Source: Octopus sinensis (lineage: Eukaryota). Taken from it: a stretch of DNA of 64,000 nucleotides. Under the pieces are notes generated by a model. The model was given only the letters and a program-made list of their open reading frames with translations, did no database searches and was not told the origin of the DNA. The DNA is taken from positions 9,858,001 through 9,922,000 of the forward strand of contig NC_043017.1 in NCBI RefSeq assembly GCF_006345805.1, in the 5' to 3' direction. Below are positions 8,362 through 63,534 of this stretch, one piece after another; the stretch's first letter is position 1; the number at the start of each line of letters is the position of its first letter. The translations under genes and the position numbers were made by a program.

Positions 8362-8402
<41 letters not shown>

Positions 8403-8493: not shown

Positions 8494-8526
<33 letters not shown>

Positions 8527-8682
8527 GTATATATGTATGTAATATATATGATATTGTGTGCATGTTTGTTATATGTGTGTGTGCACGTGTGAGCATATAT
8601 GTATGTATCTGTGTGTTTATACATGATATGTGTGCATATAGTTGTTGATATGACATACATGTGTGTGCATACATATACAAGA

Positions 8683-8713
<31 letters not shown>

Positions 8714-9525: not shown

Positions 9526-9585
9526 TAAGTACCAGTTGAGTACTGGGATTGATGTAATCGACTTAGCGCCTCTCCCAAACGCATG

Positions 9586-9616
<31 letters not shown>

Positions 9617-38225: not shown

Positions 38226-41169
38226 TTGCAATAAGTACCAGCGAAACACTGGGGTCGATGTAACCGACTAGACCCCACCTCCAAAATTTCCGGCCTTGTG
38301 CTATAGCAAGAAAGGATTATTGAAAGCAACGAGCTGGCCAAACCATTAGAGCCTCAGACAAAAAAAGTTCAGCAGCATTTTTCCTGACTTGTTCCATTCT
38401 GAGTTCAAATCCTGCTGAGGTCGACTACTTTTTATCCTTTCAGGTTCAATAAAATAAGTTGCAGTTGAAAACTGGGGCTGATCTAATCAACTACCTCCTC
38501 CCTACAAATTTCAGGTGTTTGTGCCTATAGGAGAAAGAATTAAGGAAATGAGCTGTCCAAACCATTAGGGCATCAGACAAAAAGCTTCAGCAGTATTCCT
38601 TCTGACTTAAAATTCCACTGAAGTTGACTTAGCCTTTCATCCTATTGATTGGCTTCCGTGCCGGTGGCACGTAAAATGCACCAATCCGATCATGGCCGTT
38701 GCCAGCCTTGTCTGGCACCTGTGCAGGTGGCATGTAAAAAGCACCCACTACACTCACGGAGTGGTTGGCGTTAGGAAGGGCATCCAGCTGTAGAAACACT
38801 GCCAGATCAGACTGGAGCCTGGTGCAGCCTTCTGGCTTCCCAGTTCCCCGGTCGAACCGTCCAACCCATGCTAGCATGGAAAACAGACGTTAAACGATGA
38901 TGATGATGATGATGAGATCAATAAAATAAAGTACCTGTCAAGTACCAGAGTTGTTGTGGTCTATTTGATCCCCACTCCATAAAATTGCTGGCCTTGTGCC
39001 CAAAACTTGAAGCAATTTTGTTGGGGGTGGGGGGTTAGTCCACCATACTGACTCCAGTACTAAACTGGCGTTGTATTTTATTAACCCCGGAAGTGATTAA
39101 AGGTAAAAATGACCTCAACTGGATTTGAACTTGAAATGTAGAGAATCAAATCAAATACTGTGGGGTATTTTTTTTTCCACGGGCCAACCAAAGCCTTGTG
39201 AGTGGATTTGGAAGACGGAAACTGAAAGAAGCCCGTCGTATATATGTATATATATATGCGTGTGTGTGTTTGTCCCCTAGCATTGCTTGACAACCGATGC
39301 TGGTGTATTTATGTCCCCGTCACTTAGCGGTTCGGCAAAAGAGACCGATAGAATAAGTACTGGGCTTACAAAAGAATAAGTCCCGGGGTCGAGTTGCTCG
39401 ATTAAAGGCGGTGCTCCAGCATGGCCGCAGTCAAATGACTGAAACAAGTAAAAGGGTATGTTGGTTACTCGAATTCAACGTATGAGTCTGAAAGAAAAGG
39501 ATTTTAAAAATAAAAGAAGCGGCATCTATTTACGATGGATGTGCGAATGTAATTTGAATCAAAGTATCGACTTTGCTATGAAGTCACAATGGGGAAAATC
39601 GCGATTTTTGGTTTTGCCTGGAATTGGACAAAATGTGTCTGTTGATTTCAGGATATAATTATTTTATTGTTCTGCTTCTCAACTCAAATTGTTTGGATGC
39701 GTCAAAAAGTATAAAAATGACAATGTACATATAAAGGGAAATAACTCGGTTGTCTTTTCCTGTTCAAGCAATATTTAAATTTTTAATGACAATCTCTAAA
39801 ATAAAGGCAACCTGCGGCCCGCGAGCCTTTCTGAATGGTTCGCCAAGCGAAGAATTACATTCAAATTCTTTTTTTTAAGTAGTGCTGCCAGCCTGATGAT
39901 GATGATTTTCCATGTCCCATGCGGCCTGTTTGCTCTCTGACAATCCCACGCCAAGCTTCATGTTTTTGCCTATTTGCCAACCAGGGAGCTTCTGCGCGGT
40001 GTCTCTCCTGCTAAAAATAGCAGTCAATTTTTTTTCTTTTCAAATCACACCCGATCATCGTACTATAAAACAGGTACATTAGATAATGTAGTTAAATATA
40101 CTATATCGCGGTAAAAAAATGGAATGGGCAAGGCTGGAATGGATTTGATTTGAGCTCAATTGGTGTTAAACTCTTAGGTGAGACAGAGTTACAACACAGC
40201 GTGGCTGAGTGGTTAAGAAGTTTGCATTCCAATCATGTGGTCTAGGGTTCAGTCCCACCGCACGGCATCTTGGGCAAGTATTTTCAACTATAGCCCCGGA
40301 TCAACTGTAGTCTTGTGAGTGGATTTGGTAGACGGAAACCCAATACGCGCACGGGTGTGCATGCGTTTGTCCACCACCACTGCTTGGCAACCGGGTTTGT
40401 TTTGTTTACGTTCCCGTAACTTAGAATAGGAACCAGGCTTCAAAAAAATAAAACCAATGAAGTCGATTTGTTCGACTAGAATCCCTTTATTGCATTGCCC
40501 CAGCATGGCCACAGTCAAATGCCTGAAACAAGATAGAGATAAAAAGATGCGTGTGCATGGGCAAACGAATCAGACTTTCTATTTCCGATTAATAAATGTC
40601 GGTTTGTTTATTTCACACGACAACTTCAGGAAACCCAAAAATAAATTAGAGCGATGCGTGTCTGTGTGTGTGATTGCGTTTAGTTGAGATTCTGACAGCT
40701 TGAGAATCACAGAAAAGCAAAACAATCTTGTCAGACTCTGTGAACTCATCATTCAAAGGCGTAGGTGGAAGCAAGCGTATTAAGAGTACACTTGTGTTTA
40801 GAGTGCATTTGTGTTCGTGTGTTCTGTTAAGTGTGAGAGTGTGTGTGCGTACTTAAGAGTGCATTTGACTGTGTGATCTACTAAGCATGAATTTGTATGT
40901 CTGTACAAAGCATTTTATTAATGTGTGCATTGAGAGTGTATGTATGTATGTGTGTGCGGTCCTGTTAAGTGTAAGTGTACTAAGACTGTGCCTGTGTGTC
41001 AGTTTATTTATATTTGTGTGTGCATTGAGATTATATGTATATATAGATTTATATATATATATATGAAAGAAAAAAGGTGTTCAGAATGCTGGATGGTTGT
41101 AAAAATATATATTTATTTACATATCACATATTATTTCTTCATATTAGCGCTTTCACCTACTCCTGTAGT

Positions 41170-41487
41170 TTCATTAGAAAACCTATATAAATATGTATGT
41201 ATAATATATATGTATGTATAATATAAATGCATATATGTATGTATAATATATATGTATATATGTATGTATGTATAATATATATGTACGTATGTATAATATA
41301 TATGTATGTATGTATAATATATATGTATATATATATGTATGTATAATATATATGTATATATAATATATATGTATATATATATATATATGAATGTATGTAT
41401 ATATATATGTATATATATATATATTATATATATATATATATATATATGATGTATGTATATATATATATATATATATGATGTATGTAT

Positions 41488-41521
<34 letters not shown>

Positions 41522-41705
41522 ATGTATGTATAATATATATGTATATATATATGAATGTATGTATAATATATATGTATATATATATATGAATGTATGTATA
41601 ATATATATGTATATATATATATGATGTATGTATATATATATGTAATATATATATATGAATGTATGTATAATATATATGTATATATATATATATATATGTA
41701 TGTAT

Positions 41706-41736
<31 letters not shown>

Positions 41737-41945
41737 GTATGTATAATATATATAATATAGATGTATATATATATATATGTATGTATAATATATATATATA
41801 TATATATATGTATGTATAATATATATAATATAGATGTATATATATATATATGTATGTATAATATAGATGTATATATATATATATGTATGTATAATATATA
41901 TGTATATATATTTATATGTATAATATATATATATATATATATATT
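41170..41945. repeat. Long (TA)-rich compound microsatellite immediately upstream of the TFIIB promoter
   Basis: About 775 bp almost entirely A/T with interspersed G. Confidence 0.95.
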
Positions 41946-42054
41946 TGTGTGTTTCCCTGTACGTGAGTGTCTCTTCCTCTTCACGGAACTAATTGTGAAA
42001 ACAGAAATCCGTCGTCGAAGACGATAATTAATATCGAAGTTAAATTGTAAAAGC

Positions 42055-42105
42055 AATGCTGATTGGTCAGTTTCTGTAACGTGTGCGCAGAATCGGAAGT
42101 AGAAT
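42055..42105 (+). promoter_or_regulatory. Compact promoter-like module upstream of TFIIB
   Basis: Reverse CCAAT (ATTGG 42062-42066), TGCGCA NRF1-like half site (42084-42089) and CGGAAGT ETS site (42094-42100) within 40 bp, about 240 bp upstream of the ATG. Confidence 0.45.
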
Positions 42106-42335
42106 TATGTATAAGTGAGACATTTCAAGTTGTGAGAAGTCAGTTGTCGATGGATTAGTTGACTCAATACATTCGCTCCTTTGTTTAAAAACATATCTAT
42201 ACACATTATATGTATATATATCTGTGTATATATATATGTATGCATGTCTTTCTACCTCTGTTCCATTCATAACAGTTCATTAATTGTTACATTATCGTCT
42301 CAAGTTTAAGCAAAAGCAAACAAATAACCTTACCG

Positions 42336-43280
42336 ATGGCGTTAAGGGCTTCGCGAATGGCTCGCTTGCACTGTTCAGCTCACCCGGATTCTCCTCTGAT
42401 CGAGGACTATCATGCCGGAGATATGATATGTTCCGAGTGTGGTCTGGTCGTCGGTGACCGAGTCATCGATGTCGGTTCCGAATGGCGTACCTTCAACAAC
42501 GACAAGAACACCAAAGATGCGTCGCGTGTCGGTGCCGCCGAAAACCCTTTGCTGGACGGCGGGGACCTGTCTACAATGATAGCCACTTCCTCGGGCGATA
42601 CACTACTGGACGACAACGGCAAACCCATGTACCACAGTCGAAGGAACCTCAGCGTATCTGACCGAACCCTGTTAACAGCTTTCCGTGAAATCAGCCAAAT
42701 GTCCGAACGGCTCAATCTACCCACGATGATTGCCGATCAAGCCAATACTTTGTTTAAACAGGTCCACGAGAGCAAATCCTTGAAAGGAAGGGCAAACGAT
42801 GCGATCGCTTCAGCGTGTATGTACATCGCCTGTCGACAAGAAGGGGTTCCGAGGACTTTCAAAGAAATCTGCGCCGTTTCGAAAGTATCCAAGAAGGAAA
42901 TCGGACGAACGTTCAAGTTGATTCTAAAGACACTAGAGACCAATGTTGACTTAATTACCACCGGGGACTTCATGTCTCGGTTCTGTTCCAGTCTAAGCAT
43001 GACAAACCATGTACAGAAAGCCGCTACTCACATCGCCAAAACTGCTGTTGATTTGGACCTGGTGCCGGGGAAAAGCCCCGTCACTGTTGCAGCTGCCGCA
43101 ATATATATGGCATCTCAGGCCTCCGAAAACAAGAAAACCCAGCGAGAAATTAGTGTGGTGACGGGTGTGGCAGAGGTAACTATACGGCAGTCTTATAAAC
43201 TGATGTATCCCAGAGCACGAGATCTATTCCCTTCGGAATTTAAGTTCGCTACCCCTATAGACTTGTTACCCACCCAGTAA
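42336..43280 (+). CDS. GTF2B: Transcription initiation factor IIB, full-length, single-exon CDS (314 aa)
   Basis: Zn ribbon C-x2-H...C-x2-C, B-reader [13 protein letters not shown], two cyclin repeats ([45 protein letters not shown]). No stops, frameshifts or introns in the CDS. Confidence 0.97.
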
Positions 43281-43634
43281 AACTCTGAAAACTTTATGGC
43301 AGGACTTGGTAAAACAAAAAAAAACAACTTTTTTTTTTTAAAAGAAAAGATCTTTATTTTGATGTAGAATTTTGGTTTGCTAACAACAGTGAGAGAGATT
43401 TCTGTTTTTTTTTTTTTTAAATTTAATTTTATTAATAATGATGTGGTACATTTATATATAACGGGGCTCGAAAATAACACCGAACTACTTTGTTGGGTTT
43501 CGAACCTCGCTCTCTTCCCAGTTTTCTGTCTTGCATTTTTTTTTCTTTTTGTATTTTGTTGATGTTGTATAACAGATATATTATTGAATGAAAGATTTTA
43601 TTTTTAAGTGATGAACAATGTGGTACTGTGTATG

Positions 43635-49790: not shown

Positions 49791-49898
49791 TCATTTGCAG
49801 TGCATCGACAGCAGCATGTTGCACTGTTGTTGCAAGTTCCTCGTTTGTTGGTGCAGCGCACTGTCTTCGCCATGCGTGACACGGACCATTTTCTCACA
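49791..49898 (-). CDS. SMYD3: SMYD3-like terminal exon: CEKMVRVTHGEDSALHQQTRNLQQQCNMLLSMHCK*
   Basis: gttttccag| acceptor; VTHG motif (human MRVTHGREH); TGA at 49793-49791. Confidence 0.92.
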   Translation of the reverse strand, partial: CEKMVRVTHGEDSALHQQTRNLQQQCNMLLSMHCK

Positions 49899-50489
49899 CT
49901 GGAAAACAAGAACAAATCAGACATGAAGATGAGACGACACGTGTAAAGGTGTGAGAGTGTGTGCAATGTATGTAGACATCATCCTCGTTTTAATGTCCAC
50001 TTTCCTACGCTTGCATGAGTCAGACAGTTTCCTAATGCAGATTTTCAATGGCTGGATGTCTTTTCTGTCATCAACCCTCACCTGTTTCCAAGCAAGGTTA
50101 TTTTTTCCCCATGGCCAGACATCTTTGGAAATGAATGACACTGCTTGTATGACAGTGGCACTCATTTACATCTATCATGCAATGGCAAGAAAAGGAGGGA
50201 CACACACACACACACACACAGTTTATTCTTCAATAAAAATATTGTTGACAGTGGCTTCAAAGTTTTAGCCAATTAAGCTATCATCAGACTGCAGTCCGAC
50301 CATGGCTTAACTGGCTGGAACTTCGCAGTCACTGTCAGCAATATTTTTGTTTAAAAATAAATTTGTTTTCTACAGATTAAAGTAAAATTGCATCAATCTG
50401 TGCCATGCAGCTTCACTCTCCATGCTTTAGCTTTGTTACTATGGCAACAGTCCAGATACTTATTAATCAGAAATTGACTAACCACACAT

Positions 50490-50523
<34 letters not shown>

Positions 50524-51071
50524 TGGAAGGTTTGGAGATGATGTACAGGTATTTTATATTAGAAGAAATGAGGTACTCAAAAAATCGGATGGTTTATATT
50601 TACAGATATTTATTTGTATATTACATTTTTTATATATCATATATATATATATATACACACGTATACACACGTATATATATATACACACGTATACACACAA
50701 ACACCTACAAGGTTTTGTTTGGTTCAAGGCTATAGAAGTCACTTTCCCACGGTTCCACCCAGTGGAACTGAACCCAAAACCATGTTGTTGGGAGGTAAAC
50801 TTAACACACCCAGATGTGCTTGCATCTAAAGATATTCCACTTTATGCCTTGAGGTTTTTAGCAGCACCATTGAATTGTCAACACTGTTGCACTAACCTGA
50901 CACAGACTGGACACTAATTTTTGCCAGCCCAGTAAACTGGACAACATGAGGCAAAGCATTTTACTCGCAGACAAAATGAACGTGGAACCTTATGATAAGA
51001 ACACCGCTGCCCAATCATTAGGCAACTTGTTGCCTCAGATGTATAAAGACATTTCAAATATCAAGTCTCAC

Positions 51072-51180
51072 CTTGTCCAAAACCTGGACGGTTTCTGTAG
51101 GCCGGTCGAGATATATATACAGCTTCGCTAACTTCAGTAAAGACAGGCTGTCCATGATGTTGATGCAGGAAGAGTATTGT
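51072..51180 (-). CDS. SMYD3: SMYD3-like exon: QYSSCINIMDSLSLLKLAKLYIYLDRPTETVQVLDK
   Basis: ctttaaag| and AAG|gtgaga; LKLAKL corresponds to MKVGKL; phase 2 to 0. Confidence 0.9.
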
Positions 51181-52354
51181 CTTTAAAGAGAAAAGGGAAA
51201 AAAAAAGACAGTTTATTTATTTAACATTACTGAACGTGGCCAATGCCAGTGCCGTCTGACTGGCTCCCGTACATGGTCGATACCAGCCCCCTCACCCTGT
51301 CTGGGTCCTGTGCTGGTGGCACATAAAAAGCACCCACTATAATCCCAGAGTGGTTGGCGTTAAGAAGGGCATTCAGCTGTAGAAACACTGCCAGATCAGA
51401 TTGGAGCCTGAGGCAGCCTCCTGGCTTGCCAGACCCCCTAGTCAAACCATCCAACCCATGCCAGTATAAAAAAACGGACGTTAAACGATGGTGATGATGA
51501 TGATGGTAGCCTCAGAAAGACAATTCTGCAAATTCTTGTAGAGCAATCAGCACAAATGCTTTGTTTATCGTGATCAAACGCATGTGGTGCACATTAGCTT
51601 TGCTCCTTCCATGAAATCAATGTTACCTGAACAGGTGCCGCATGTCAGGTATCAGAGTGAATGTAGAACAACATCAGATGAAGAGTTTTGCTCAAGAACA
51701 TAACACACCACCCAGTCCAGGGATTGAAACCACAATCTTGCTATCATGAATGCAACACCCTAGCCTGTGCCCTTACATTTAGCATTATTATTACAGAGTT
51801 ACAAAAGGTGATGAGCTAGCAGAATTGTTAATATTTTTTTCTACTCTAGGCACAAGGCCCAAAATTTTGGAGGAGTTGGGGGAGGCAGTCAATTAGATTA
51901 ACCCCAGTATGTAACTGGTAATTAATATATCAACCCTGAAAGGATGAAAGGCAAAGTTGACCTAAATTTGAGTCAATTATTATCATCATCCTCATCATCA
52001 TCGTTTAACGTCCGCTTTCCATGCTATAGCATGGGTTGGCCGGTTCAACTGGGGTCTGGGAAGCCTGAAGGCTGCACCAGGCCCAGTCAGATCTGGCAGT
52101 GTTTCAACAGCTGGATGCCCTTCTTAACGCCAACCACTCCGTGAGTGTAGTGGGTGCTTTTTACGTGCCACAGACACAGGTGCCAGACAAGGCTGGCAAA
52201 CGGCCACGCTCGGATGGCGCTTTTTACGTGCCACCGGCACGGAGGCCAGGCGAGGCTGGCAGCGGCCACGATCGGATGGTGTTTGTTACATGCCACCAGC
52301 ACGAAGATTCTATTATGAAGAAGAGAAAGCAGAGGAAAGAAAGCTTTAACTTAC

Positions 52355-52532
52355 GGCACTTGTTTTAAGACCTTCTCGCTGTAAACTGCTGCTTTCTCCC
52401 ATAACTGCAGGGAAATGCAAGCGTCTTTGGCAATTGCCATTGTACTGACAATATTCAAATTAGATTCATGGAATAAACTATTTTCAACTTTCTTCAAGTT
52501 TTCTTCAGCAGAGTCTAAGGCATTTTGGATTT
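52355..52532 (-). CDS. SMYD3: SMYD3-like exon, TPR-like C-terminal domain: IQNALDSAEENLKKVENSLFHESNLNIVSTMAIAKDACISLQLWEKAAVYSEKVLKQV
   Basis: (ct)n-ccag| and CC|gtaagt; DACIxLxxWExA matches SMYD3 DACINLGLLEEA. Confidence 0.92.
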
Positions 52533-52942
52533 CTGGAGAGAGAGAGAGAGAGAATTTTAAAAATATAATTTTTTATTTCTTGTTTTGAGAAGGTTATTTC
52601 TGTGAACAAAAAACTAGTTGTATGATGTATATGTTGGTGGTGCAGTATGATGGGACAATAGGAGCAGCAGAGGTGGGATGTGTTGTGTAATGCGAGGGGA
52701 GTCATAGATGAGATATTGTGTGTCATTGATGTCATCATCATCATTGTTGTTTCAATGTTCACTTTCCTCTGCTCACATAAAATGGATGTAATTTGTTGAG
52801 GCAGATTTTCTAAGGCCAGATATCCTTCCTGTCACCATCCCTCACCTGTTTCGAAGTAAGGTAATATTTTCCCATAACAAGACATGTTTACCTTGGAAGA
52901 CAGGAAATGAAGGGCACAGCTAGCACGACAATGACACTCATT

Positions 52943-53145
52943 GGGCATTTTCCGTCCGGGTTGCGGATCTGTGGAATAAGCTGCCGGACGAGATAGTGAA
53001 GATGCCGACGACCGCTCGGTTCAAAGTCTCCCTTGACCACAAATGGCCTGAACTCTTTGTATGAACACCACCCTGTACATACCTCTCCATGTCCCCCCTA
53101 CATGGCCTTGCTTTTTGCTTTTTGAGCCAAAAAATTAACTTAACT
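52943..53145 (+). mobile_element. Young CR1/L2-group LINE 3' end with (TTAAC)n tail
   Basis: AFSVRVADLWNKLPDEIVKMPTTARFKVSLDHKW. Confidence 0.85.
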
Positions 53146-53374
53146 ATTTAAAACTATCACATGATGCCAAGTCAAGGAGACACCAACTCAAACACACACA
53201 TAAAGTTGTTTCAGTTTCCATCAACCAAATCCACAAGGCTTTGGTTGGCCCAGAACTATAGTAGAAAGCATTACACAGTGGAACCTCAGTTTATGATTCT
53301 GTTGTTAAACCTAAATAAATCTTGGAATTAAATGGTTTTGATTTACTGTCAGGTGATTTTCGGCCAACCTTGTG

Positions 53375-53700
53375 TTAAGTTAAGTTAAGTTAATTTTTTG
53401 GCTCAAAAAGCGAAAAGCAAGGCCATGTAGGGGGACATGGAGTTATGTACAGGAAGGGTATTCATGCAAAGAGTTCAGGCCATTTCTGGTCAAGAGAGAC
53501 TTTGAACCGAGCGGTCGTCGGCATCTTCACTATCTCGTCCGGCAGCTTATTCCACAGATCCGCAACCGGGACGGAGAAAGCCCCTCTCCTTCGATTGAGA
53601 TGAAATCGTTGCAGATAGAGCTTTTCGGAGTGACCCCGCAGCCAACGCTCTGGAGCAGGAGTGAAGAACAGCTCTTTCGAGAGGTTACACTTTCCGCTTA
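53375..53700 (-). mobile_element. Second copy of the same CR1-like 3' end, inverted and longer
   Basis: Reverse complement of 52943-53145 with scattered substitutions. Confidence 0.85.
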
Positions 53701-54013
53701 TGATATTGTGTGAGTGTATGCGTGTGTGTCTTCGTATGTATGTGTGTGTACTGTTGTCTAAATATCATGTGATGGTTTTAAATGAACATCATCATCATCA
53801 TATAAACAAGGTTGTTTGTTTCCAATCTTCCATGAAAAACAAGTGGTGCTCACCAAAGAGTTTGTCCAACAGACACAACTATGTTTTCAAGAATTGTCCA
53901 ATGAGATCCAGCAGGGCACAATGTTTGGCAGTGGTGATAAAGTGATTGTCAAGAAAGGAATGGTAAGTGATGAGGAACGATAGTTAGAGACAACAAATAA
54001 TGGAAATACTGAC

Positions 54014-54154
54014 CTCCACTCTCAAACATCTTATTTAAATCCTTTACAAATTTCCTGGTTTCCATCCACAACTGGCAAACCTCATCAACATATTCAGTAG
54101 GGAATTCCATCACTTTACACTTCACACAGGGCCACAACTGACAGTAGCCATCAT
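54014..54154 (-). CDS. SMYD3: SMYD3-like exon: DGYCQLWPCVKCKVMEFPTEYVDEVCQLWMETRKFVKDLNKMFESG
   Basis: ctttcag| and G|gtcagt; phase 1 to 1, open frame. Confidence 0.85.
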
Positions 54155-54204
54155 CTGAAAGAAAGCATTTGAGGAATCTTATAGAAAAACTGTGATGTTT
54201 AAGA

Positions 54205-54600
54205 TAATAAACTTTACTTAAGCTCTTTGCTCCTTATGGAGCAGAATGCATCAATGACATTTCTCCACTGTTTGCGACTCTGGGCAGTTGGATCCCTACT
54301 TTTACAGTACCCCATCTTCCTGAAGGAAGGCCTTCCGCTTCCAAGTCTTGGTGGTTTTAGATTGCCATCGAGGTTCTGTAACTTTGTTTTTGCCTCTCTA
54401 GGTAGCAAAGTTGGCCATATGTAAGCCCATTTTTACCTCTGGGAAGAGGTGGTCCATATTAGTTTAGCCCCTGTCCTTTGACCTGTCCAGCAAAGGAGGA
54501 GGATCTACCAGGGGCTTGCACTCCCCTGGCATAGCTCTCAGGGGACATCAATGCATACAAGCCACCTCAGTGCAACAAAGACTGCACCTTGTGGTGAAAT
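54205..54600 (-). mobile_element. Internally deleted RTE element (5' UTR joined to 3' end)
   Basis: Leader motif GAGAGCTATGCC...GGACAGGTCAAAGG..GGGGCTA, then DPTAQSRKQWRNVIDAFCSIRSKELK* typical of RTE C-termini. Confidence 0.65.
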
Positions 54601-54773
54601 GTTATAAATTACAAAAATCTAATTATTTACACAAATGCTGTCACCCTTAACTGCTTCAAACTCATGTCTTATAGGTTCCCTTTTTCTAATTCCATCCATT
54701 TATCTTTTCTACTCACAGACATGACCAACTGAGACTGTGGATAATGTCCAACAAACTCATTCTTGGTCTATCC

Positions 54774-55016
54774 CTAGGGGTCTTGTTGGTTGGCTTGGAC
54801 TTGAAGAATCCCTTTTGTGATTATTTCCTGTGACATTCTAAGCACTTGTCCATAATACCAGAGGTGTGACCTCTCAATGTGGAGCAGTGGTGGTTCAACC
54901 GAAAGGGACTCCCTGATCTCTGATCTATGCACTTTGTCAAGTAGCATTACTCGAGAGATCCTTTGAAGGATCCCCATTTCAGATGCTCGTATTCCTGATC
55001 GTAATCTTTTGGTCAT
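54774..55016 (-). mobile_element. RTE (Expander/Rex3-like) C-terminal fragment
   Basis: RSGIRASEMGILQRISRVMLLDKVHRSEIRESLSVEPPLLHIERSHLWYYGQVLRM. Confidence 0.85.
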
Positions 55017-55174
55017 TAAACAACATTTACAATCATATAGGTATGGACCAAGATGAAAACTGAGCAGAAGATAGCAAATTTATCTTTTTTTTTTTATATA
55101 CCAACCTCCCCTCTGGAAAGGAACAAATGCTGAAGATGGTGCCAGCAGCTGTAAATTTAGCATTAATTACTTAC

Positions 55175-55247
55175 TGTTAATTTCTTTAATCCCAGTAAAT
55201 CCATCACAGTTAGCCATAAAACACTTCACACTGGTCATTTGTTTATC
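55175..55247 (-). CDS. SMYD3: SMYD3-like exon: DKQMTSVKCFMANCDGFTGIKEIN
   Basis: ttttatag| and A|gtaagt; supplies the phase 0 to 1 link the flanking exons require. Confidence 0.85.
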
Positions 55248-55375
55248 CTATAAAAGAAAGTAGAAGCAAATTATATGCAAATACATGTATAGGTACAGGG
55301 GTGGTGGCTGTGTGGTTAAGAAGCTCACTTTGCAAGAAAAGAAAACCCCTAAGGCTATGAAAACAAAGTATTTAC

Positions 55376-55492
55376 CGTTTGCTCTGCATCTGTGGTACAC
55401 ATGGAACAGAGACATCTGAAATAGTATCGCTGTAGTAATTCTTCTCTCCTTTCCCAGCTGGGGGCATCGTTCTGGATGTAACTGATGAAAAC
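55376..55492 (-). CDS. SMYD3: SMYD3-like exon, catalytic Tyr and post-SET: VFISYIQNDAPSWERREELLQRYYFRCLCSMCTTDAEQT
   Basis: ctttcag| and ACG|gtaaat; ISY...RRxxL..YYFxCxCxxC. Confidence 0.94.
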
Positions 55493-55528
55493 CTGAAAGA
55501 AAGGAACAGCAAATACTGAAATATATTT

Positions 55529-55759
55529 ATTTCTTTATTACCCACAAGGGGCTAAACACAGAGGGGACAAACAAGGACAGACAACGGGATTAAGTCGATT
55601 ACATCGACCCCAGTGCGTTACTGGTACTCAATTTATCGACCCCGAAAGGATGAAAGGCAAAGTCGACCTCGGCGGAATTTGAACTCAGAACGTAGCGGCA
55701 GACGAAATACCACAAAGCATTTCGCCCGGCGTGCTAACGTTTCTGCCAGCTCGCCGCCT
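55529..55759 (-). mobile_element. Monomeric young family A SINE
   Basis: Near-consensus sequence; flanked by direct repeat AATATATT. Confidence 0.9.
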
Positions 55760-56355
55760 TAATATATTGTTTGGGCCAAACATCTGTGGTGTCTGTGTAT
55801 ATAAACATGTACGTAGTGTGCAAATATTTTTTTGTGCGTCTGTCTGTGCATGTATGGGTATATGGGTATCTGTATGTGTGTGGACGTGAGCATGAAGGTA
55901 GGTGTGTGAACGAGTGTGTCTAAGTCAGTGTGCACCAAATCAAAGATCTGTCGTGTATTTACCGATGTATGAGTAAATATATATCTGTATGTGTGTGTGA
56001 ATGAATGCATCTATGTAGGTGTCTGTTGTATGAGTTAGTGTGTTCATGTTATGCATAAGCATACGTGTGTGTATGTGTGTGTATCTAATAAACAAAGATG
56101 ACTCCAAAGATTGCACCCCCTTGAATGAAAATAGATGAGACCTTTCGTTCTGGTTCAATTAAGCACACAACACGCAACAGTGGCTACGTCTTGTTCAAGG
56201 GGAATAACTTAGAGAAGAGCAGAAGTTGTATGTGGGTGTGCATGAATCCTTTCTACTGGAAGCACAAGGCCTCCAGTAAAAGATGACAATGATAAAATGA
56301 GGAGAAAAAGAAAAGACAGCAGAAAAATAGTAAAACAGAAATACAAGTTGTATAC

Positions 56356-56464
56356 CTGATTAGGTAATGGTTGTGTTATTGGCTCCAGGGCCCTGATGGC
56401 AAGTTTTGTGCCACTAAAGCTTACAATAGCATTAGGACAACATTGGTGATCCAAATACGATGCC
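56356..56464 (-). CDS. SMYD3: SMYD3-like exon, SET signature: ASYLDHQCCPNAIVSFSGTKLAIRALEPITQPLPNQ
   Basis: tttccag| and CAG|gtatac; (N/D)HxCxPN...LxIRA motif. Confidence 0.94.
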
Positions 56465-57529
56465 CTGGAAACAAGTAAATCATATGATTAGCTATCGATT
56501 TAAACCAACCATACCTGGCCCAAATATTTTACCTGGTCTATGTTCAAACTGGCAGATCCAGTTTTTCACGTCTAACTCTTACAACAGCAATTCAAAAATA
56601 AACAATTACATCATTGAAATCTCAAAGCTAAGAGATAATGCATGATTAATTCAAAGCAATGTGAATATTTAAGCATTGCATTTGACAGAGAAATCTAAAT
56701 GCTAAATGGTTAATATAAATATTCATGATACAGATATTTGTAGGAAGATCTTTAAGCAATGCAGTTGAGAAAACACCAGTAACATTTTTTCTCTAATCTC
56801 TTGGATTATTTTGTAGCTTATATTTTATAAAGGGAAGCTTTCCCGAAATATAATAGAAGCATTATTAAACAACCTATGTAGGATGATATCATATTTTGCC
56901 TAACTTCTCACCTAAATTGCTTCAAGGTTTTCTTAAAAAAATTACTTATACCATTTACACATTGCAATGTTTCAAACAAATGACAGTACTCCATCCTGGA
57001 CATTATTGTCTGGAGTTCTAGAACTCATAATGCAGGTTCCCTGGTTCCTATGGCATACAAGTGACCAAAATCACAACATTTCCCTTAAACAGGATGACAG
57101 TCCGTCACAAGGGGTGACCCAATTACAGCTGAGTAGACTGGACCAACATGAAATAAAGCGTTTTTGCTCAAGAACACAAAGTGCTGAATGGTCCAGGAAT
57201 TGAAACCACAATCTTGTGATTGTGAGTGTACCACTCTAACCACTAGGCCACACAGTCTCACTTTAACAAATATCCATGGTTTTAATATAAAATACAATTA
57301 AATGGCTCGTTAATATGGCTCTATGGGTCCTAAATTAATGAGATAAATCAGAGAGAAATTCCTGATGCAGTTGCTAGACGTGCAAAATTCAGCAGTCAAA
57401 TCTCCCACAAATCACTGCGTTAAAAAGAAAAAAGGACACAGTGGATGATGCAGTCCCAAACAACCTGAGAAAAAGACTGGTTGGTCACAACTGGAATACT
57501 TTTGATCAAAGATTTGCCTCAATCAGGAA

Positions 57530-58192
57530 TGACTCAGGGTTAAATAAATAGCAGTGATGATGATGATGATGATAATAGAGGGGAGATGATAAAAATGGTG
57601 TAGAAATGATGAGGACGATAATATTGGTGGTAGTAATGTTGTTGTTGTTGATGATGATGATGGTGGTGATTCAAAGAGTGGAGATGATAAAGGCATAGAG
57701 ATGATGATGAAGTTGGTGATGGTGATGGTCATGCTGGTGGTATTGATGATGATGCTGATAATAGTGATGGTGATGCAGAGGGAGTGGAGGTGATGGTGGT
57801 GGTGGTGAAGGTGAGTGGCGGTGGTAGCAGGAGAGCAAAATATTTAAGGGGCACTTACAAATCCGAGGGAGGAAGGTTGTTGGTTTATTCCTCCCCTCTC
57901 ACTCACCCACCCACCCCACCCTCATCAACCAGATAAACCCAGTACAAACCAAACAGCCACCAGAAAGAGGTCGGAGGTGATACTCACCCCAGATAAACTC
58001 CAGATCCAATGACATTTTCGTGAAGCTCATCATGGATGCTGTAACTGTTGATGACCATCTGTAAGACAAAAGACACATCGGTTTTAAGGGCCCCAGAAAC
58101 AACAGAAGGCATTAAGGTCAGTAGTAGTGGTAATAGTGGTGGTGGTGATAACAGTAGTAGGACTGATGGTGGTAGTAATAATAATAATGGTG

Positions 58193-58227
<35 letters not shown>

Positions 58228-58245
58228 TCTATTGATATTAGCTCT
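57530..58245. repeat. (GAT)/(GGT)/(AGT) trinucleotide low-complexity tracts flanking an SMYD3 exon
   Basis: Directly visible on both sides of exon 57988-58058. Confidence 0.85.
57988..58058 (-). CDS. SMYD3: SMYD3-like exon: MVINSYSIHDELHENVIGSGVYL(G)
   Basis: cttacag| and GG|gtgagt; equals the VICNSFTI...VGVGLY segment of the SET domain. Confidence 0.92.
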
Positions 58246-58744
58246 CTATAACTTCATGTAATAAAGTGTTCCCTGATAATCCGTTCCAGTTAAGCATCCA
58301 AATACACCTGGAACATCCAATACAGGATTCTGAGCAACCGGATTTGCATACAAGCTTGGGTTTATCTTAATTTTTCATATATATATACATAATGGTATCG
58401 ACCAGGTTATGGGATGTTGTTATACATTGCTGATCACAATGTGCATTAGCTTTTGAATGACACCACCTTGTTGGTTAGGTGAGCAGGCAAACATTACCTC
58501 TGATCGGAAGGATATTCCGAGACAGGGTTACCTATTTAATGACTTCATGTGCTGGAGCAATGTGAAATGAAAGGTTTTGCTCAACAACAGAATGTGTTGC
58601 CCAGTTTGGAAATCAAACCCATGACCTAGCAATTATGAGTGTAACCACCAGACCATGCAGAAAGGGAGAGAGAGAGAGAAGGGGGAAGGGAGAGAGAGAG
58701 AGAGAACCAGAGAATGTGCTTGCTGAGGATCCAGCAATACCTAC

Positions 58745-58875
58745 CTTACCAAAGAACTCCCACAACTGTGGAACTGGTGGCAGAACTTCGCTACCTTCCA
58801 GAACTTTCGATAAAATACTCAGCACATGGGCAAACTGCTTACATCGTAGTTCGTCTTGCTGCATTCTCTCCAAAT
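58745..58875 (-). CDS. SMYD3: SMYD3-like exon: LERMQQDELRCKQFAHVLSILSKVLEGSEVLPPVPQLWEFFGK
   Basis: ccaacag| and AAG|gtaggt; phase 1 to 0 fits its neighbours. Confidence 0.88.
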
Positions 58876-59150
58876 CTGTTGGACAGACAACACAATACAT
58901 GAATTTATTAATGTCTTCTGTTTTACCTGCATTCACCTTACTGTCTGCTAATTGTTTGTCTTCTCATGCACCCCCTAATGTCATCTTGTTACCTCTGAAA
59001 TAAATTAGATGCATGAGAGGCTGTATAGCTAAAGAGCTTGGTTCCCAACTATTTGGTTTTCGGTTTAGTCCCACTGCATGGCATCTTGGGCAGGTGTCAT
59101 CAACTATAGCCCCTGGGTCAACCAATGCCTTGTGAGTAGATTCAGTAGAC

Positions 59151-59556
59151 AGAAACGTTAGCACACCGGGCGAAATGCTTAGCAGTATTTCGTCTGCCGT
59201 CACGTTCCGAGTTCAAATTCCACCGAGGTCGACTTTGCCTTTCATCCTTTCGGGGTCGATAAATTAAGTACCAGTAACGCACTGGGGTCGATATAATCGC
59301 CTTAATCCGTTTGTCTGTCCTTGTTTGTCCCTTCTGTGTTTAGCCCCTTGTGGGTAGTAAAGAAATAGGTATTTCGTCTGCCATTACATTCTGAGTTCAA
59401 ATTCCGCCGAGGTCGACTTTGCCTTTCATCCTTTCGGGGTCAATAAATTAAGTACCAGTTACTCACTGGGGTTGATGTAATCAACTTAATCCATTTGTCT
59501 GTCCTTATTTGTCCCCTCTATGTTTAGCCCCTTGTGGGCAATAAAGAAATAAGAAA
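59151..59556 (+). mobile_element. 5'-truncated dimeric family A SINE inserted into a family B SINE
   Basis: Interrupts GTAGACAGAAAC|TGAAAG of family B; AGAAAC is duplicated; two tandem units. Confidence 0.88.
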
Positions 59557-59950
59557 CTGAAAGCCTGCATAGACACATGTATGCATGCATATACATACAT
59601 ACATATATATATCATCATCATTTAATGTCTACCTTCCATGCTGGCATGGGTGGGACATATATATACACATATGTATGTATTTATAGATCTCTTGGAGACA
59701 GGTGAGGGTTAGCAACAGGAAGAGCATCAAGCCATAGAAAGTCTGCTGCAACAAATTCTGTCCAATTCATGTCAGCACAGAAAAGTGGACTTTAAATGAT
59801 GACTACATGATATCAAGACAAGGATACACACAAACACATACATATATGTGTATATAAGACAGGCTTCTTTCACACACACACACACATACTCACTGCTTAT
59901 GAAATACTGGGAGGAATAAATAATGAAAACAAAGAGAAAACCAGTCTTAC

Positions 59951-60020
59951 GTGACATCAGGTCTGAGAACGAACGCTTCCAGTAAGGGTCTGTGCTAATC
60001 ATTTTAGTGTGATCACCATT
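59951..60020 (-). CDS. SMYD3: SMYD3-like exon: NGDHTKMISTDPYWKRSFSDLMS(H)
   Basis: ctcttcag| and C|gtaaga; corresponds to SFxDLxS of SMYD proteins; phase 0 to 1. Confidence 0.9.
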
Positions 60021-60825
60021 CTGAAGAGAAAGGAAATTCGGAATATAAGCATATGCCAGCATGGAAGACAAACAGTAAATGATGATGACATCCATGTGTG
60101 TATATACACATGCACATATATATGCGCGTGCATATATACCATACATATATATATATATATATATATATCTAATTTAATATATATATATATATATATATAT
60201 ACACTCTTGGAGTGGTTGGCATTAGGAAGGGCAACCAGCTGTAGAAACATTGCCAGATCAGATTGGAGCCTGGTGCAGCCTTCTGGCTTGCCAGTCCTCA
60301 GTCAAACCGTCTAACTCATGCCAGCATGGAAAGCAGACGTTAAACGATGATGATGATGATGATAATGATATATATATATATATAGACAGATAAAGAGAGT
60401 CTTTGAAAAGGTTTATTTATATTTATTTAACCAGTTTCACAATTTCCTGATTTTCAAAAGTAGTGTTAAATAGAAGAAGGTGGAGGTAAGCTGTATTTGC
60501 CTTGGTTTTGACTGAAGTTTGATAATTTGCTCCTTTTTAATGAAAGATTATGATTTACATTGCTATCAGTGGAAGCTCATTTTGATTGGTTGAAGCTGGT
60601 CATAAGGTAAGAAGGTCATGTGACTGCATGAATAATAATTGCACCAATAGTTAAGGCTGAATCAGTCGAGTGGATGCATCATGCCATACATAGACTGGAT
60701 TACAATTGTGTATTTGGTCACTTGACTATATGGACATAATTCCACTAAAGAGAAGGCTGTGCCATGCGATAAAATGAACAACAGTTTGTCAGAAGAGCAA
60801 AAAATGGAGAAATAGCTTACTTATA

Positions 60826-61032
60826 TCAGGGGATGCAGAAAAGTTCCTGGCTTTGGGTAAAAGAAAGTACAGTTAATTATGATTTTATTCAAAATATACT
60901 CCTCTTAAATTCACACACTTATTGCAGTGGTCCTTCAGTTTTTCTAAGCTCTGTAAAAGAACTTGGAAGGTTGAGCCTTCAACCAGGCCTTTCACGATAC
61001 TTTTAAAGCCAAGAACTTTTCAACACCCCGTC
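60826..61032. mobile_element. mariner-type MITE
   Basis: Imperfect TIR GGGGATGCAGAAAAGTTCCTGGCTTT / AAAGCCAAGAACTTTTTCAACACCCC. Confidence 0.72.
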
Positions 61033-61216
61033 ATGGAAACTATGCGAAAGCTGACATTGGAACATGATGATGTGGACAATGCCAGTAACATGTAAAAGGC
61101 ACCCAGTACACTCCTGTAAAGTGGTTGGCATTAGGAAGGGCATCCAGCTGTAGAAACCATGCCAAAACAGATTGGAACCTGGTGCAGCTTTCCAGTTCCA
61201 GTGAAACCATCTAACC

Positions 61217-61514
61217 CAGGGTTACTCAACCAGTTTTTGTTTATGGATCCCTTTAATTACTACTTTATTCTGATAGATCCCCATAGCCGTTCAATATTTA
61301 AAAACTAGTTTTATAGAAACTTCTCTCAAACCTCCTCTTTTGTTTTTCACACATTAACTTGTGTAGGTTGAACTAAGTAAAATGTTACTGAAAGAAACCC
61401 AGCTGTTTCTTACAATACATACCAATACATACATCTAAAGCAAAATTTTTCCAGGGCCCCTTAAAATATTGTGGACCCCCAAAAATCTTATATGGACCTT
61501 GTTGAGACCCACTC
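61217..61514. mobile_element. hAT MITE nested in a family C SINE
   Basis: 8-bp TSD ATCTAACC at 61209-61216 and 61515-61522; degenerate CAG..CTCAAC TIRs. Confidence 0.85.
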
Positions 61515-62122
61515 ATCTAACCCATGTCAGCATGGAGAATGGATGCTAAATGATGATGATGAGGAGGAGATAAGCCCAGTTTGCACATGCCGAGTGAGGG
61601 CTGGCTTGGCACAAGACAACAACAACAGCTGTGGATGCGCAATGGCCCAGTGGTCAGGGCAGCAGACTCGCGGTTGTAAGAACACAGTTTCGATTCCCAG
61701 ACCGAGGCTCCAGCAGGGAAGGATGGTGAACCCCACTGTACTCTTTCACCACAACTTTCTCTCACTCTTTCTTCCTACTTCTGACACAAAGCAGAGGAAC
61801 CATGGTGTAACCCACTATGGTGTGGTAAACTTTCAGACCCTAGTCTAGATTGCAAATCCTCTGTACCCCAGGATGGTTCAGCTCTCCACCCGTTAAAAGC
61901 CACCATTAACAGAATGAGGATAACAATGTAGCTTTCATGCCCATGCAACCGCCAATCTATCGCATGTGGTGGATGGATCTTCAAGTTGCCACACGCATTC
62001 TTAGTAGCTTAAAGTAGGCTCGAATTAGAGATTATTCTTTGTGGCTAATGGCGCGAGTCCTGATTGGAAGAAGAAGAAGACAACAACAGCTAGCAGACAA
62101 ACAAACAATAGAAACATACTAC

Positions 62123-62233
62123 CTGGTACCTGATAATTATTCTCAGAAGCATTCGTATACTTTCAGACAAGACTTCAGGCACAACATCGATGAAAAATGG
62201 ACATTCTTGCTTGTGGATTGACCAATCAGCTTT
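62123..62233 (-). CDS. SMYD3: SMYD3-like exon: KADWSIHKQECPFFIDVVPEVLSESIRMLLRIIIRYQ
   Basis: End of MYND (WxxHKxEC) and start of SET-I; canonical splice sites, phase 0 to 0. Confidence 0.93.
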
Positions 62234-63117
62234 CTGGAAATGAAAGATACCAAACATGTTGAAATGTTTCATGTTAATTCATTGTAATTCATAAAATCAC
62301 AATAACATTTTGAAATTTTGAGACAGGCCCAGTAATTTTCGTGGGTGGGTGCCACTCAATTACATCACCCTCCCCCATGCCCCGTGCTCACAAGAACTTG
62401 TTTTATCAACCCTGAAAGAAGGAAAAGCTAAGTTGACCTTGGTGTCATTTGAACCCAGAATGTAAAGTTGGAAGAAATGCCACTAAGCATTATATTTGAT
62501 GCTCTCATGATTCTGCTAACTTGCTACCTTGATAATGGACTTTCCTGTCAAAGATGATGTCTGAGTGTTCAGTTTTGCCAAACAATCTTCACAAATGACT
62601 TGTTCATAGTGATCAAATGTATGTATTGTATATTAGCTCACCACTCTCTCCATCAAATCAACGTTACCTCAACAGGTGGATGGTGTCCCACACATCAGGT
62701 GTTGAAGTGATCGCAGATGACTGAGGACTGGCTGCACCAGGCTTCAATCTGATCTGGCAGAGTTTCTACAGCTGGATGCCATTCCTAACACCAACCACTC
62801 TGAGAGTGTAGTGGGTGCTTTTACGTGCCACCAGCATGAGGACCAGTCAGGCAGTACTGGCAACGGCCACGCTCAAATGGTGTTTTTTATGTGCCACCTG
62901 CACAGGAGCCAGTCCAGCAGCACTAGGGCATCCAGCCATAGAAACTATGCAATAACAGACATTGGAGTTTGACACAGTCCACCAACACACTGGATCCTGT
63001 CAAGGCATCCAACCCACGCCAGCATGGAACACAGGTATTACACAATGATGATGATGATGAAATAAATTAATGAAAAAGAAAATAGATGAAAGCAAAGGAC
63101 AGTTTTAAGGGATTTAC

Positions 63118-63181
63118 CTGACAGCTGGAATTGCAGTATCTCAGAAGTTTACATCTAGAACAGTGTTTCAGGCTGGAAGCA
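63118..63181 (-). CDS. SMYD3: SMYD3-like exon, MYND finger: ASSLKHCSRCKLLRYCNSSCQ (earlier exons lie beyond base 64000)
   Basis: cttcacag| acceptor, CAG|gtaaat donor; CxxC...YCxxxCQ MYND motif. Confidence 0.92.
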
Positions 63182-63534
63182 CTGTGAAGAAGATGAGGTG
63201 AAAGAAAATATAATGTTATAGTGTAAAGAGGCAATGGTTATGAGAACAGTGGGGTGGGGTTAGATATTTAGGTTCCTAACGACACAAGTGGTAGCATGGA
63301 AGTTTGCTTTGTAACTGCAGTACCTTGCATACGTGTCTTCTACAATACTCACCTTCCTTCTCAAGTCATGCTGACTCATAGGGGCTGGTTTCCTCGTTTT
63401 CCTTGGCGTATATCTTCCCCACCTGGACAGGATGCTGGTCTGTCGCAGGATTCCTCCCGAAGACGTATTATCAACCAACAAAGATTATAAACTCTTAACG
63501 AACAGGTGTTTGTGTGTGTGTGTGTGTGTGGCCA

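What the first reader, a model, noticed from the sequence alone, without database searches (positions are those of the whole stretch)
42336..43280. Intact, intronless, divergent TFIIB: retrogene paralogue or retro-replacement of a core transcription factor
Seen: a full 314-aa TFIIB with no CDS intron, in a genome whose three other genes here are finely split (42-200 nt internal exons). Zn ligands and both cyclin folds are intact. Normally well-conserved positions differ from human TFIIB as I recall it: EDYH for EDYR, RTFNND for RTFSND, DASRVG for DPSRVG, PGKSPVT for PGRSPIS, EISVVTG for EIGDIAG. Several changes fall in the B-reader/B-linker that influences start-site selection. Established: bilaterian GTF2B is usually single-copy and multi-exon, while tissue-specific basal factors in animals are known mainly for TBP, TAFs and TFIIA. 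Inference: either a functional second TFIIB made by retroposition, possibly tissue-restricted, or the sole TFIIB after retro-replacement of its parent. No poly(A) scar or TSD is visible, so any such event is old.
Basis: partly seen in the sequence, partly recalled or inferred. Interest (0 to 1): 0.72.

Follow-up and report, generated by a model that had tools for sequence, protein, structure and literature searches.

The report
Octopus TFIIB gene without introns
This is the working gene for the core transcription factor TFIIB in Octopus sinensis; octopuses, argonauts and cuttlefish all share a version that lost all eight ancestral mollusc introns before these groups split, most likely because a processed mRNA copy replaced the original gene.

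Summary
Window 42336-43280(+) is an uninterrupted 314-aa TFIIB with a zinc ribbon, B-reader and two cyclin repeats, colinear with human TFIIB. The window is Octopus sinensis.

The intronless coding sequence is not special to this genome. O. vulgaris, O. bimaculoides, Argonauta hians and the cuttlefish Acanthosepion pharaonis all have it. They also share a CCAAT/ETS promoter motif pair and coleoid-specific substitutions.

Chiton and oyster TFIIB carry eight introns at identical positions and phases, and three of these are shared with a mammal. All eight were therefore lost before the octopod-decapod split (Late Carboniferous-Permian).

Selection is strongly purifying (dN/dS about 0.03). Two database searches found no second cephalopod TFIIB. 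Cuttlefish transcripts are unspliced and start just after the promoter motifs.

The "sole TFIIB after RNA-mediated replacement" reading is favoured, and the "tissue-specific paralogue" reading is not. "Divergent" is only partly right.

Whether the copy moved to a new locus or converted the old one in place is unresolved. The status of Nautilus, a whole-genome check for a second copy, and octopus expression were not testable here.

The parts
42059..42070 (+). Inverted CCAAT box (CTGATTGGTCAG), the first half of the conserved promoter motif pair
   Evidence: The pattern GATTGG..(5-60 nt)..GGAAGT occurs exactly once per roughly 21-kb locus. It is on the gene's strand, 220-630 bp upstream of the ATG, in three Octopus species, Argonauta and Sepia.
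42094..42102 (+). ETS-like site (CGGAAGTAG), the second half of the conserved promoter pair, with the predicted transcription start just downstream
   Evidence: In a Sepia species, transcript contigs L021/L022 begin 4-22 nt after the equivalent motif and are colinear with genomic contig L015. The octopus start site is inferred by analogy and was not observed.
42105..42335 (+). Predicted unspliced 5' UTR of about 230 nt (inferred)
   Evidence: Inferred from the Sepia transcripts. An in-frame TAA at 42270 fixes the ATG at 42336 as the start codon (sequence).
42336..43280 (+). Complete single-exon TFIIB coding sequence, 314 codons plus stop
   Evidence: The protein is identical in the O. sinensis and O. 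vulgaris assemblies, and the window is 100% identical to O. sinensis CM016879.1.
42372..42494 (+). Zinc ribbon (aa 13-53; ligands C13, H16, C32, C35)
   Evidence: PF08271 match, E=1.3e-12; residues checked.
42465..42650 (+). B-reader and B-linker region (about aa 44-105), with E49 and R64 equivalent to human E51 and R66
   Evidence: Alignment to human TFIIB. Boundaries come from my knowledge of the TFIIB structures and are approximate.
42660..42929 (+). First cyclin-like TFIIB repeat (aa 109-198), including the G151/R152 DNA-contact residues
   Evidence: PF00382 best stretch 109-198; residues.
42948..43211 (+). Second cyclin-like TFIIB repeat (about aa 205-292), including the V281/R284 helix-turn-helix residues
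   Evidence: Second PF00382 stretch and Cyclin_C match 208-292; alignment to the human core domain; residues.
43311..43352 (+). Encoded A-rich tract (A4CA9CAAC, T11, A4GA4) followed by GATC, a possible relic of a retrocopy poly(A) tail
   Evidence: O. bimaculoides has A20..A14 at the same place and Sepia has A15 at +53 nt. Argonauta has none. The Octopus and Sepia 3' flanks cannot be aligned above shuffled controls.
49794..63183 (-). Neighbouring SMYD-like (SET+MYND) gene with at least 12 small coding exons, shown for context on intron density and octopod synteny
   Evidence: tblastn of P0151 against the window. The same neighbour is present in O. vulgaris, O. bimaculoides and Argonauta.

Best explanation
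This is the functional, and apparently only, TFIIB (GTF2B orthologue) of Octopus sinensis. It does the ordinary TFIIB job. The zinc ribbon docks on RNA polymerase II. The B-reader and B-linker help open DNA and choose the start site. The two cyclin repeats clamp the TBP-promoter complex.

What is unusual is the gene's history. An mRNA-derived, reverse-transcribed copy lacking all eight ancestral mollusc coding introns became the sole TFIIB gene in the common ancestor of octopuses and cuttlefish/squid. The most likely route is retroposition next to, or capture of, a CCAAT/ETS housekeeping-type promoter, followed by loss of the multi-exon parent. This is known as retrogene replacement or an orphan retrogene. 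Since then the gene has been transcribed as a single unspliced exon and kept under strong purifying selection, after a moderately accelerated phase that fixed about 11 coleoid-specific substitutions.

Shown: gene identity, the intronless state in five coleoid genomes, the ancestral intron positions, purifying selection, the conserved promoter motifs, and unspliced transcripts in Sepia.

Inferred: the RNA-mediated mechanism, the move to a new locus, absence of a parent copy from the complete genomes, and the octopus transcription start site and expression.
For: Identity: Pfam TFIIB x2 plus the zinc ribbon, a gapless alignment to human TFIIB at E=1e-144, and key residues intact.

Shared intronless state: the coding sequence is exactly 945 bp in O. 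sinensis, O. vulgaris, O. bimaculoides and Argonauta hians, with the same DUF1075 and SMYD-like neighbours. It is 927 bp in Acanthosepion pharaonis.

Ancestral introns: chiton has 8 and oyster 9 coding introns, and 8 of them sit at identical codon and phase. Three of those (133/0, 176/1, 270/1) are shared with a bat.

Single origin: the coleoid sequences form one clade and share signature residues and 11 fixed unique substitutions. They also share the CTGATTGGT..CGGAAGT motif pair upstream.

Function: dN/dS is 0.028 for O. sinensis versus O. bimaculoides and 0.053 between two Sepia species. Across the coleoid split dN is only 0.04-0.09 while dS is saturated.

Transcription: Sepia transcript contigs are colinear with genomic contigs and begin just after the ETS motif. 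The decapod protein variants P0123 and P0124 are carried by 51 and 23 contigs in total, a mix of whole-genome and RNA-seq assemblies.

Sole copy: the octopus-query and chiton-query searches (top 120 hits each, down to about 68% and 74% identity) return no other cephalopod TFIIB.

Retroposition hints: an encoded A-run lies 30-70 nt after the stop codon in both Octopus and Sepia, against a background of 0.25-0.8 A>=9 runs per kb. The oyster gene has different neighbours.

Concept and date: retrogene replacement is described in PMC5803294 and PMC3548309. The coleoid crown is dated to the Late Carboniferous-Permian in PMC5360930.
Against: No whole-genome tBLASTn was possible, so an unannotated or highly divergent second TFIIB locus is not excluded.

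No octopus transcript contig was found in the collection. P0001 is carried only by the two genome assemblies, so octopus expression and the 5' UTR structure are inferred from Sepia and from dN/dS.

The classical retroposition hallmarks are weak. The A-run is absent in Argonauta, and the Octopus and Sepia 3' flanks cannot be aligned. The only candidate target-site duplication (42096-42109 versus 43361-43374, 12 of 14 matches) has a chance probability of roughly 0.06 by my estimate. It should not have survived about 300 My.

Relocation relative to the ancestral locus could not be tested. The SMYD-like neighbour has no detectable homologue outside octopods.

The oyster has an ATTGG..ACGGAAG pair about 170 bp upstream of its gene start. 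This would fit retention of an ancestral promoter and hence in-place intron loss.
Confidence: 0.6

Rival explanations
1. In-place intron loss. A cDNA of the TFIIB mRNA recombined with the original gene (gene conversion) and erased all eight coding introns at the ancestral locus. The gene never moved and kept its own promoter. It is still the sole, functional TFIIB.
For: All the evidence for an intronless, sole and conserved gene fits this equally well. A functional housekeeping-type promoter lies immediately upstream. A similar ATTGG..ACGGAAG arrangement sits about 170 bp upstream of the oyster gene start, the only occurrence in 16.4 kb. No convincing target-site duplication was found.
Against: Recombination with cDNA in animals usually removes a few adjacent, 3'-biased introns rather than all eight across a gene of 6-13 kb (my knowledge; the model is discussed in PMC3652778). 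The encoded A-run just after a very short 3' UTR in two deep lineages is more easily read as a poly(A) relic. The oyster neighbours (RINGv, Endonuclease_NS) differ from the octopod neighbours. CCAAT and ETS sites are generic in housekeeping promoters, and the chiton shows no such pair within 5 kb.
Confidence: 0.3
2. Retrogene paralogue. An intron-bearing parental TFIIB still exists in coleoids, and this copy is an additional, possibly tissue-biased, basal factor.
For: A full genome search could not be run. No octopus transcript contigs were seen for this gene. Duplicated TFIIBs do exist in some animals, including Limulus, Tachypleus and Bradybaena. The coleoid lineage is accelerated 2-3 fold, as is often seen for new paralogues.
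Against: Neither search returned another cephalopod TFIIB, although annotated proteomes of O. bimaculoides, O. vulgaris, Argonauta and A. pharaonis are in the database. No unnamed sequence shares the coleoid signature or groups next to the coleoids. dN/dS of about 0.03 over roughly 300 My, intact DNA, TBP and Pol II contact residues, and a CCAAT/ETS promoter all look like a housekeeping gene. The gene is found in many independent Sepia RNA-seq and genomic assemblies.
Confidence: 0.07
3. Processed pseudogene or chance ORF with no function.
For: It has the intronless structure typical of processed pseudogenes.
Against: The 314-codon ORF is intact in five species separated by up to about 300 My. 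dN/dS is 0.03-0.05, and the transcripts and promoter are conserved.
Confidence: 0.01

Closest known systems
Human/metazoan TFIIB (GTF2B; PDB examples 29vf_M, 5iy6, 1c9b)
   Same: Same length and domain order, a gapless alignment, about 70% identity to mammalian TFIIB, and identical zinc ligands. The start-site residues (E49/R64) and the BRE-contacting residues are also the same.
   Different: The gene structure differs: there are no coding introns, against at least 5 mapped in a bat, 8 in chiton and 9 in oyster. There are about 11 coleoid-fixed substitutions at otherwise conserved columns, for example N101S, S107V, R135Q and S250T.
Retrogene replacement / orphan retrogenes (e.g. amphioxus and Ciona SYCP1, PMC5803294; human orphan retrogenes, PMC3548309)
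   Same: A single-coding-exon gene stands where all outgroups have a multi-exon gene. No parental copy is detectable, the state is conserved across a clade, and the gene is transcribed and functional.
   Different: A different locus from the parent is part of the usual definition and could not be shown here. The gene is an essential general transcription factor rather than a tissue-specific gene. I found no paper reporting this for GTF2B.
Cephalopod SP6-9b/c intronless paralogues (PMC7661307)
   Same: These are intronless genes shared by cephalopod genomes and attributed to retrotransposition early in the lineage.
   Different: Those are extra paralogues that sit next to an intron-containing parent. 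For TFIIB no parent is found, so this is replacement rather than duplication.
Tissue-specific basal-factor paralogues (TRF2/TBPL1, TAF7L, ALF/GTF2A1L)
   Different: There is no evidence here for a second TFIIB or for restricted expression. The conservation and promoter type look like a housekeeping gene.

Membership tests
TFIIB (GTF2B orthologue) | N-terminal zinc ribbon with C-H-C-C ligands | tested here: met
   PF08271 E=1.3e-12; C13, H16, C32 and C35 present.
TFIIB (GTF2B orthologue) | Two cyclin-like TFIIB repeats forming the core domain | tested here: met
   PF00382 with two stretches, E=4.4e-58. Residues 105-312 align to human core-domain structures at E about 1e-99.
TFIIB (GTF2B orthologue) | B-reader/B-linker with the conserved acidic and basic start-site residues (human E51, R66) | tested here: met
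   E49 in GSEWRTF and R64 in DASRVG. The variants N54, N58 and A62 also occur in 10-13 of 115 other animal TFIIBs.
TFIIB (GTF2B orthologue) | Orthology to TFIIB rather than BRF1/BRF2 | tested here: met
   Human TFIIB scores E=1e-144, against 1e-15 for BRF1 and 1e-8 for BRF2. The best database hits are all annotated TFIIB at 68-100% identity.
TFIIB (GTF2B orthologue) | Binds TBP-DNA and Pol II and supports initiation | not testable with these tools
   Needs biochemistry or genetics. The contact residues G151/R152 and V281/R284 are conserved.
Orphan retrogene / retrogene replacement | Lacks all introns that the ancestral gene had in its coding sequence | tested here: met
   Eight introns have identical position and phase in chiton and oyster, and three are shared with a bat. 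Five coleoid genomes have none.
Orphan retrogene / retrogene replacement | No parental multi-exon copy remains in the genome | tested here: inconclusive
   No other cephalopod TFIIB appears among the top 120 hits of two protein searches or in the window. A whole-genome tBLASTn was not possible.
Orphan retrogene / retrogene replacement | Located at a locus unrelated to the parental locus | tested here: inconclusive
   The octopod neighbours (DUF1075, SMYD-like) differ from the oyster neighbours. However, only 5-10 kb of flank was available, and the SMYD-like gene has no detectable outgroup homologue.
Orphan retrogene / retrogene replacement | Poly(A) remnant at the 3' end of the inserted copy | tested here: inconclusive
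   Encoded A-runs lie 31-72 nt (Octopus) and 53-68 nt (Sepia) after the stop codon, and none in Argonauta. Positional homology could not be shown.
Orphan retrogene / retrogene replacement | Flanking target-site duplications | tested here: not met
   The only candidate is a 12-of-14 match, 42096-42109 against 43361-43374. It is compatible with chance (about 0.06 by my estimate) and is not seen in Sepia. Loss of duplications is expected after about 300 My, so this does not exclude the family.
Orphan retrogene / retrogene replacement | Functional: transcribed and under purifying selection | tested here: met
   dN/dS is 0.03-0.05. Unspliced Sepia transcript contigs run through to A-rich 3' ends. 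Octopus transcripts were not seen directly.

The most novel reading that the evidence does not exclude
Replacement of the essential TFIIB gene by a processed copy at the base of the coleoids reset its regulation. It was followed by adaptive change at otherwise invariant core-domain and linker positions (N101S, S107V, R135Q, S250T, G273S). On this reading coleoid pre-initiation complexes would differ from those of other animals in start-site choice or core-promoter recognition, as one component of the coleoid-specific regulatory reorganisation.
Probability: 0.07. Interest if true: 0.7.

Novelty: new member of a known kind. Interest (0 to 1): 0.4.

Why it matters
TFIIB is an essential, nearly always single-copy general transcription factor. 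Wholesale replacement of such a gene by a processed copy, or erasure of all its introns, and its retention for about 300 million years across a whole animal clade is a clean example of retrogene replacement of a core housekeeping gene. It gives cephalopod genomics a discrete, datable rare genomic change, present in octopods and decapods and still to be tested in Nautilus. It also provides a small set of lineage-specific substitutions at otherwise invariant TFIIB positions that could be tested in vitro. It does not reveal a new kind of factor or mechanism.

Tried and rejected
1. Synteny test for relocation. I rebuilt the downstream neighbour from its exons and searched for it. It is a fast-evolving SMYD-like gene, only 49% identical between Octopus and Argonauta, with no hit outside octopods at E<=1e-10, so ancestral linkage could not be tested. 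It is also absent from the +/-10 kb around the Sepia gene.

2. Poly(A)-relic homology. Global alignment of the Octopus and Sepia 3' flanks scored no better than shuffled controls, so the A-runs cannot be shown to be the same ancient tract.

3. Target-site duplications. Only a 12-of-14 match was found, which I judge to be chance.

4. Looking for Nautilus or a hidden cephalopod paralogue among unnamed transcript-derived hits. Cluster look-ups gave no cephalopod names beyond the intronless clade. A neighbour-joining tree and a signature-residue screen found no sequence allied to the coleoids.

5. Octopus transcripts. The only extra Octopus-type contig (L014) is colinear with the genome and looks genomic, so it says nothing about splicing or expression.

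6. Literature. Four searches found no report of an intronless or retro-derived GTF2B.

7. Ancestral promoter. The strict motif pair is absent from the chiton and oyster flanks. A relaxed version occurs once upstream of the oyster gene, which is too generic to decide anything.

Full report
**Observation.**
- Pfam finds two TFIIB cyclin-like repeats (E=4.4e-58) and the TFIIB zinc ribbon (E=1.3e-12).
- The protein aligns to human TFIIB without a single gap, residues 4-312 against 6-314, at E=1e-144. BRF1 and BRF2 score about 1e-15 and 1e-8.
- The zinc ligands (C13, H16, C32, C35), the start-site residues equivalent to human E51/R66 (E49/R64) and the DNA-contact residues equivalent to human G153/R154 and V283/R286 are all present.
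- The intron-density contrast is real. The SMYD-like gene downstream (49794-63183, minus strand) has at least 12 coding exons of 22-62 aa.

**Source and distribution.** The window is 100% identical to Octopus sinensis chromosome CM016879.1.
- The identical protein is encoded in O. vulgaris. O. bimaculoides differs at 3 residues and Argonauta hians is 91% identical.
- In all four the coding sequence is an uninterrupted 945 bp, flanked by the same DUF1075 gene upstream and the SMYD-like gene downstream.
- The cuttlefish Acanthosepion (Sepia) pharaonis also has an uninterrupted coding sequence, 927 bp as annotated and 90% identical.
- The intronless state therefore predates the octopod-decapod split. 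[quoted passage not shown]

**Ancestral structure.** I mapped splice junctions exactly by requiring GT/GC..AG boundaries that reproduce the annotated protein.

| Species | Coding introns mapped | Positions in octopus codon/phase numbering |
|---|---|---|
| Chiton (Liolophura) | 8 | 41/2, 69/0, 104/0, 133/0, 176/1, 213/0, 244/2, 270/1 |
| Oyster (Magallana) | 9 | the same eight plus 6/2 |
| Bat | at least 5 | shares 133/0, 176/1 and 270/1 |

Because chiton and bivalve span the deepest split of living molluscs, the cephalopod ancestor had these eight introns. The coleoids lost them all, while neighbouring genes remained finely split. Simultaneous loss of every intron points to an RNA intermediate.

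**Function.**
- dN/dS is 0.028 between O. sinensis and O. bimaculoides (dS 0.15) and 0.053 between two Sepia species.
- Across the coleoid split dS is saturated while dN is only 0.04-0.09.
- A motif pair, an inverted CCAAT box (CTGATTGGT) followed 20-40 nt later by an ETS-like CGGAAGT, occurs exactly once per roughly 21-kb locus. It is on the gene's strand, 220-630 bp upstream of the ATG, in all five coleoid genomes. In the window it lies at 42059-42070 and 42094-42102.
- In a second Sepia species, transcript contigs L021/L022 are 99.8% colinear with genomic contig L015. They start 4-22 nt after the ETS motif, and L021 runs on to a distal A-rich end. The mRNA there is a single unspliced exon driven by that promoter.
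- By analogy the octopus start site should lie near 42105. This is inferred, because I found no octopus transcript contig in the collection.

**Is it the only TFIIB?**
- A search with the octopus protein listed 120 hits down to 68% identity. A second search with chiton TFIIB listed hits down to about 74% identity.
- Both returned the same cephalopod set and no other cephalopod-named TFIIB, although annotated proteomes of several cephalopods are in the database.
- Unnamed transcript-derived hits do not share the coleoid signature residues, and none sits next to the coleoid clade in a neighbour-joining tree. Further cluster look-ups named only a clam.
- This supports a sole copy but does not replace a whole-genome tBLASTn, which these tools cannot run.

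- Among 115 non-cephalopod TFIIBs, H26 occurs in 48, N54 in 13, N58 in 13 and A62 in 10, so these are ordinary variants.
- T250 (S in 115 of 115), S273 (G in 113), Q135 (R in 113), V107, S101 and E124 are coleoid-specific at near-invariant columns. K246 is octopod-only.
- Eleven substitutions are fixed in all three coleoid lineages and absent from 11 comparison species. Five fall in cyclin repeat 1, and two each in the ribbon, the linker and repeat 2.
- Tajima relative-rate tests give 27-44 coleoid-unique changes against 8-18 in chiton, abalone or oyster, with p from 2e-2 to 6e-6.
- Identity to non-mollusc outgroups is 72-73%, against 74-79% for other molluscs.

**Mechanism: relocation or in-place conversion?** This remains open.
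- For retroposition:
  - An encoded A-rich tract follows a very short 3' UTR in Octopus (43311-43349; A20..A14 in O. bimaculoides) and in Sepia (A15 at +53 nt). The background is only 0.25-0.8 A>=9 runs per kb.
  - The oyster gene has different neighbours.
- Against, or neutral:
  - Argonauta lacks the tract, and the Octopus and Sepia 3' flanks cannot be aligned.
  - The one candidate target-site duplication is a 12-of-14 match that chance can explain.
  - Oyster has a relaxed ATTGG..ACGGAAG pair about 170 bp upstream of its gene start. That would fit an inherited promoter, although such sites are generic.
  - The synteny test failed because the SMYD-like neighbour has no detectable homologue outside octopods.
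- I put retroposition plus parental loss at about 0.6, in-place cDNA conversion at about 0.3, and a surviving hidden parent at about 0.07.

**Comparison with what is known.** As a protein this is a regular member of the TFIIB family. As a gene it matches what the literature calls retrogene replacement or an orphan retrogene (PMC5803294; PMC3548309). Intronless retro-derived genes have already been proposed in cephalopods for SP6-9b/c (PMC7661307). I found no report of this for GTF2B. It is therefore a new member of a known kind: a tidy, datable rare genomic change in an essential basal factor, not a new mechanism.

**Verdict.** Interest is moderate (0.4).

Noticed in passing
L004-L009 (Sepia sp. 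transcript contigs), junction at L004 position 395/396; compare L015 2374 and L012 9995: Six transcript contigs from four sequencing projects carry a different, non-coding, AT-rich 5' segment of about 395 nt. It joins the TFIIB sequence 6 nt before the ATG, and the genome has no AG acceptor at the junction. The shared 1005 nt are 100% identical to the genomic contig. This could be an unusual alternative 5' exon or a very recent 5'-truncated secondary copy inserted elsewhere.
   Followed up: partly
window 49794-63183 (-), protein P0151: The downstream neighbour is a SET+MYND (SMYD-like) gene with at least 12 small exons. It evolves fast, at 49% identity between Octopus and Argonauta, and the database search found no homologue outside octopods at E<=1e-10.
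   Followed up: partly
window about 40000-41950: About 2 kb of (TA)n/(TATG)n-type microsatellite (GC 0.28) lies immediately upstream of the TFIIB promoter. Argonauta also has TA/CA microsatellites on both sides of its gene, so the locus sits in repeat-rich, fast-turnover DNA while the promoter motifs persist.
   Followed up: no
L012 9973-10003 and proteins P0123/P0124: The cuttlefish gene has an in-frame upstream ATG that gives MAGKIPRMAQLHC (315 aa), parallel to octopus [13 protein letters not shown]. The annotated A. pharaonis protein (308 aa, starting MAQLHC) is therefore probably 7 residues too short.
   Followed up: partly
L011 4005-5307 versus 5001-11436 (oyster): The oyster TFIIB gene range overlaps, on the opposite strand, an Endonuclease_NS gene. 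The only ATTGG..ACGGAAG motif pair in the locus lies inside that overlap, about 170 bp upstream of the TFIIB range start.
   Followed up: no
one search hit list (P0045/P0048; P0047/P0055; P0049/P0056): TFIIB is not strictly single-copy in all animals. The snail Bradybaena similaris has two adjacent-numbered genes on one contig, and horseshoe crabs have at least two.
   Followed up: no
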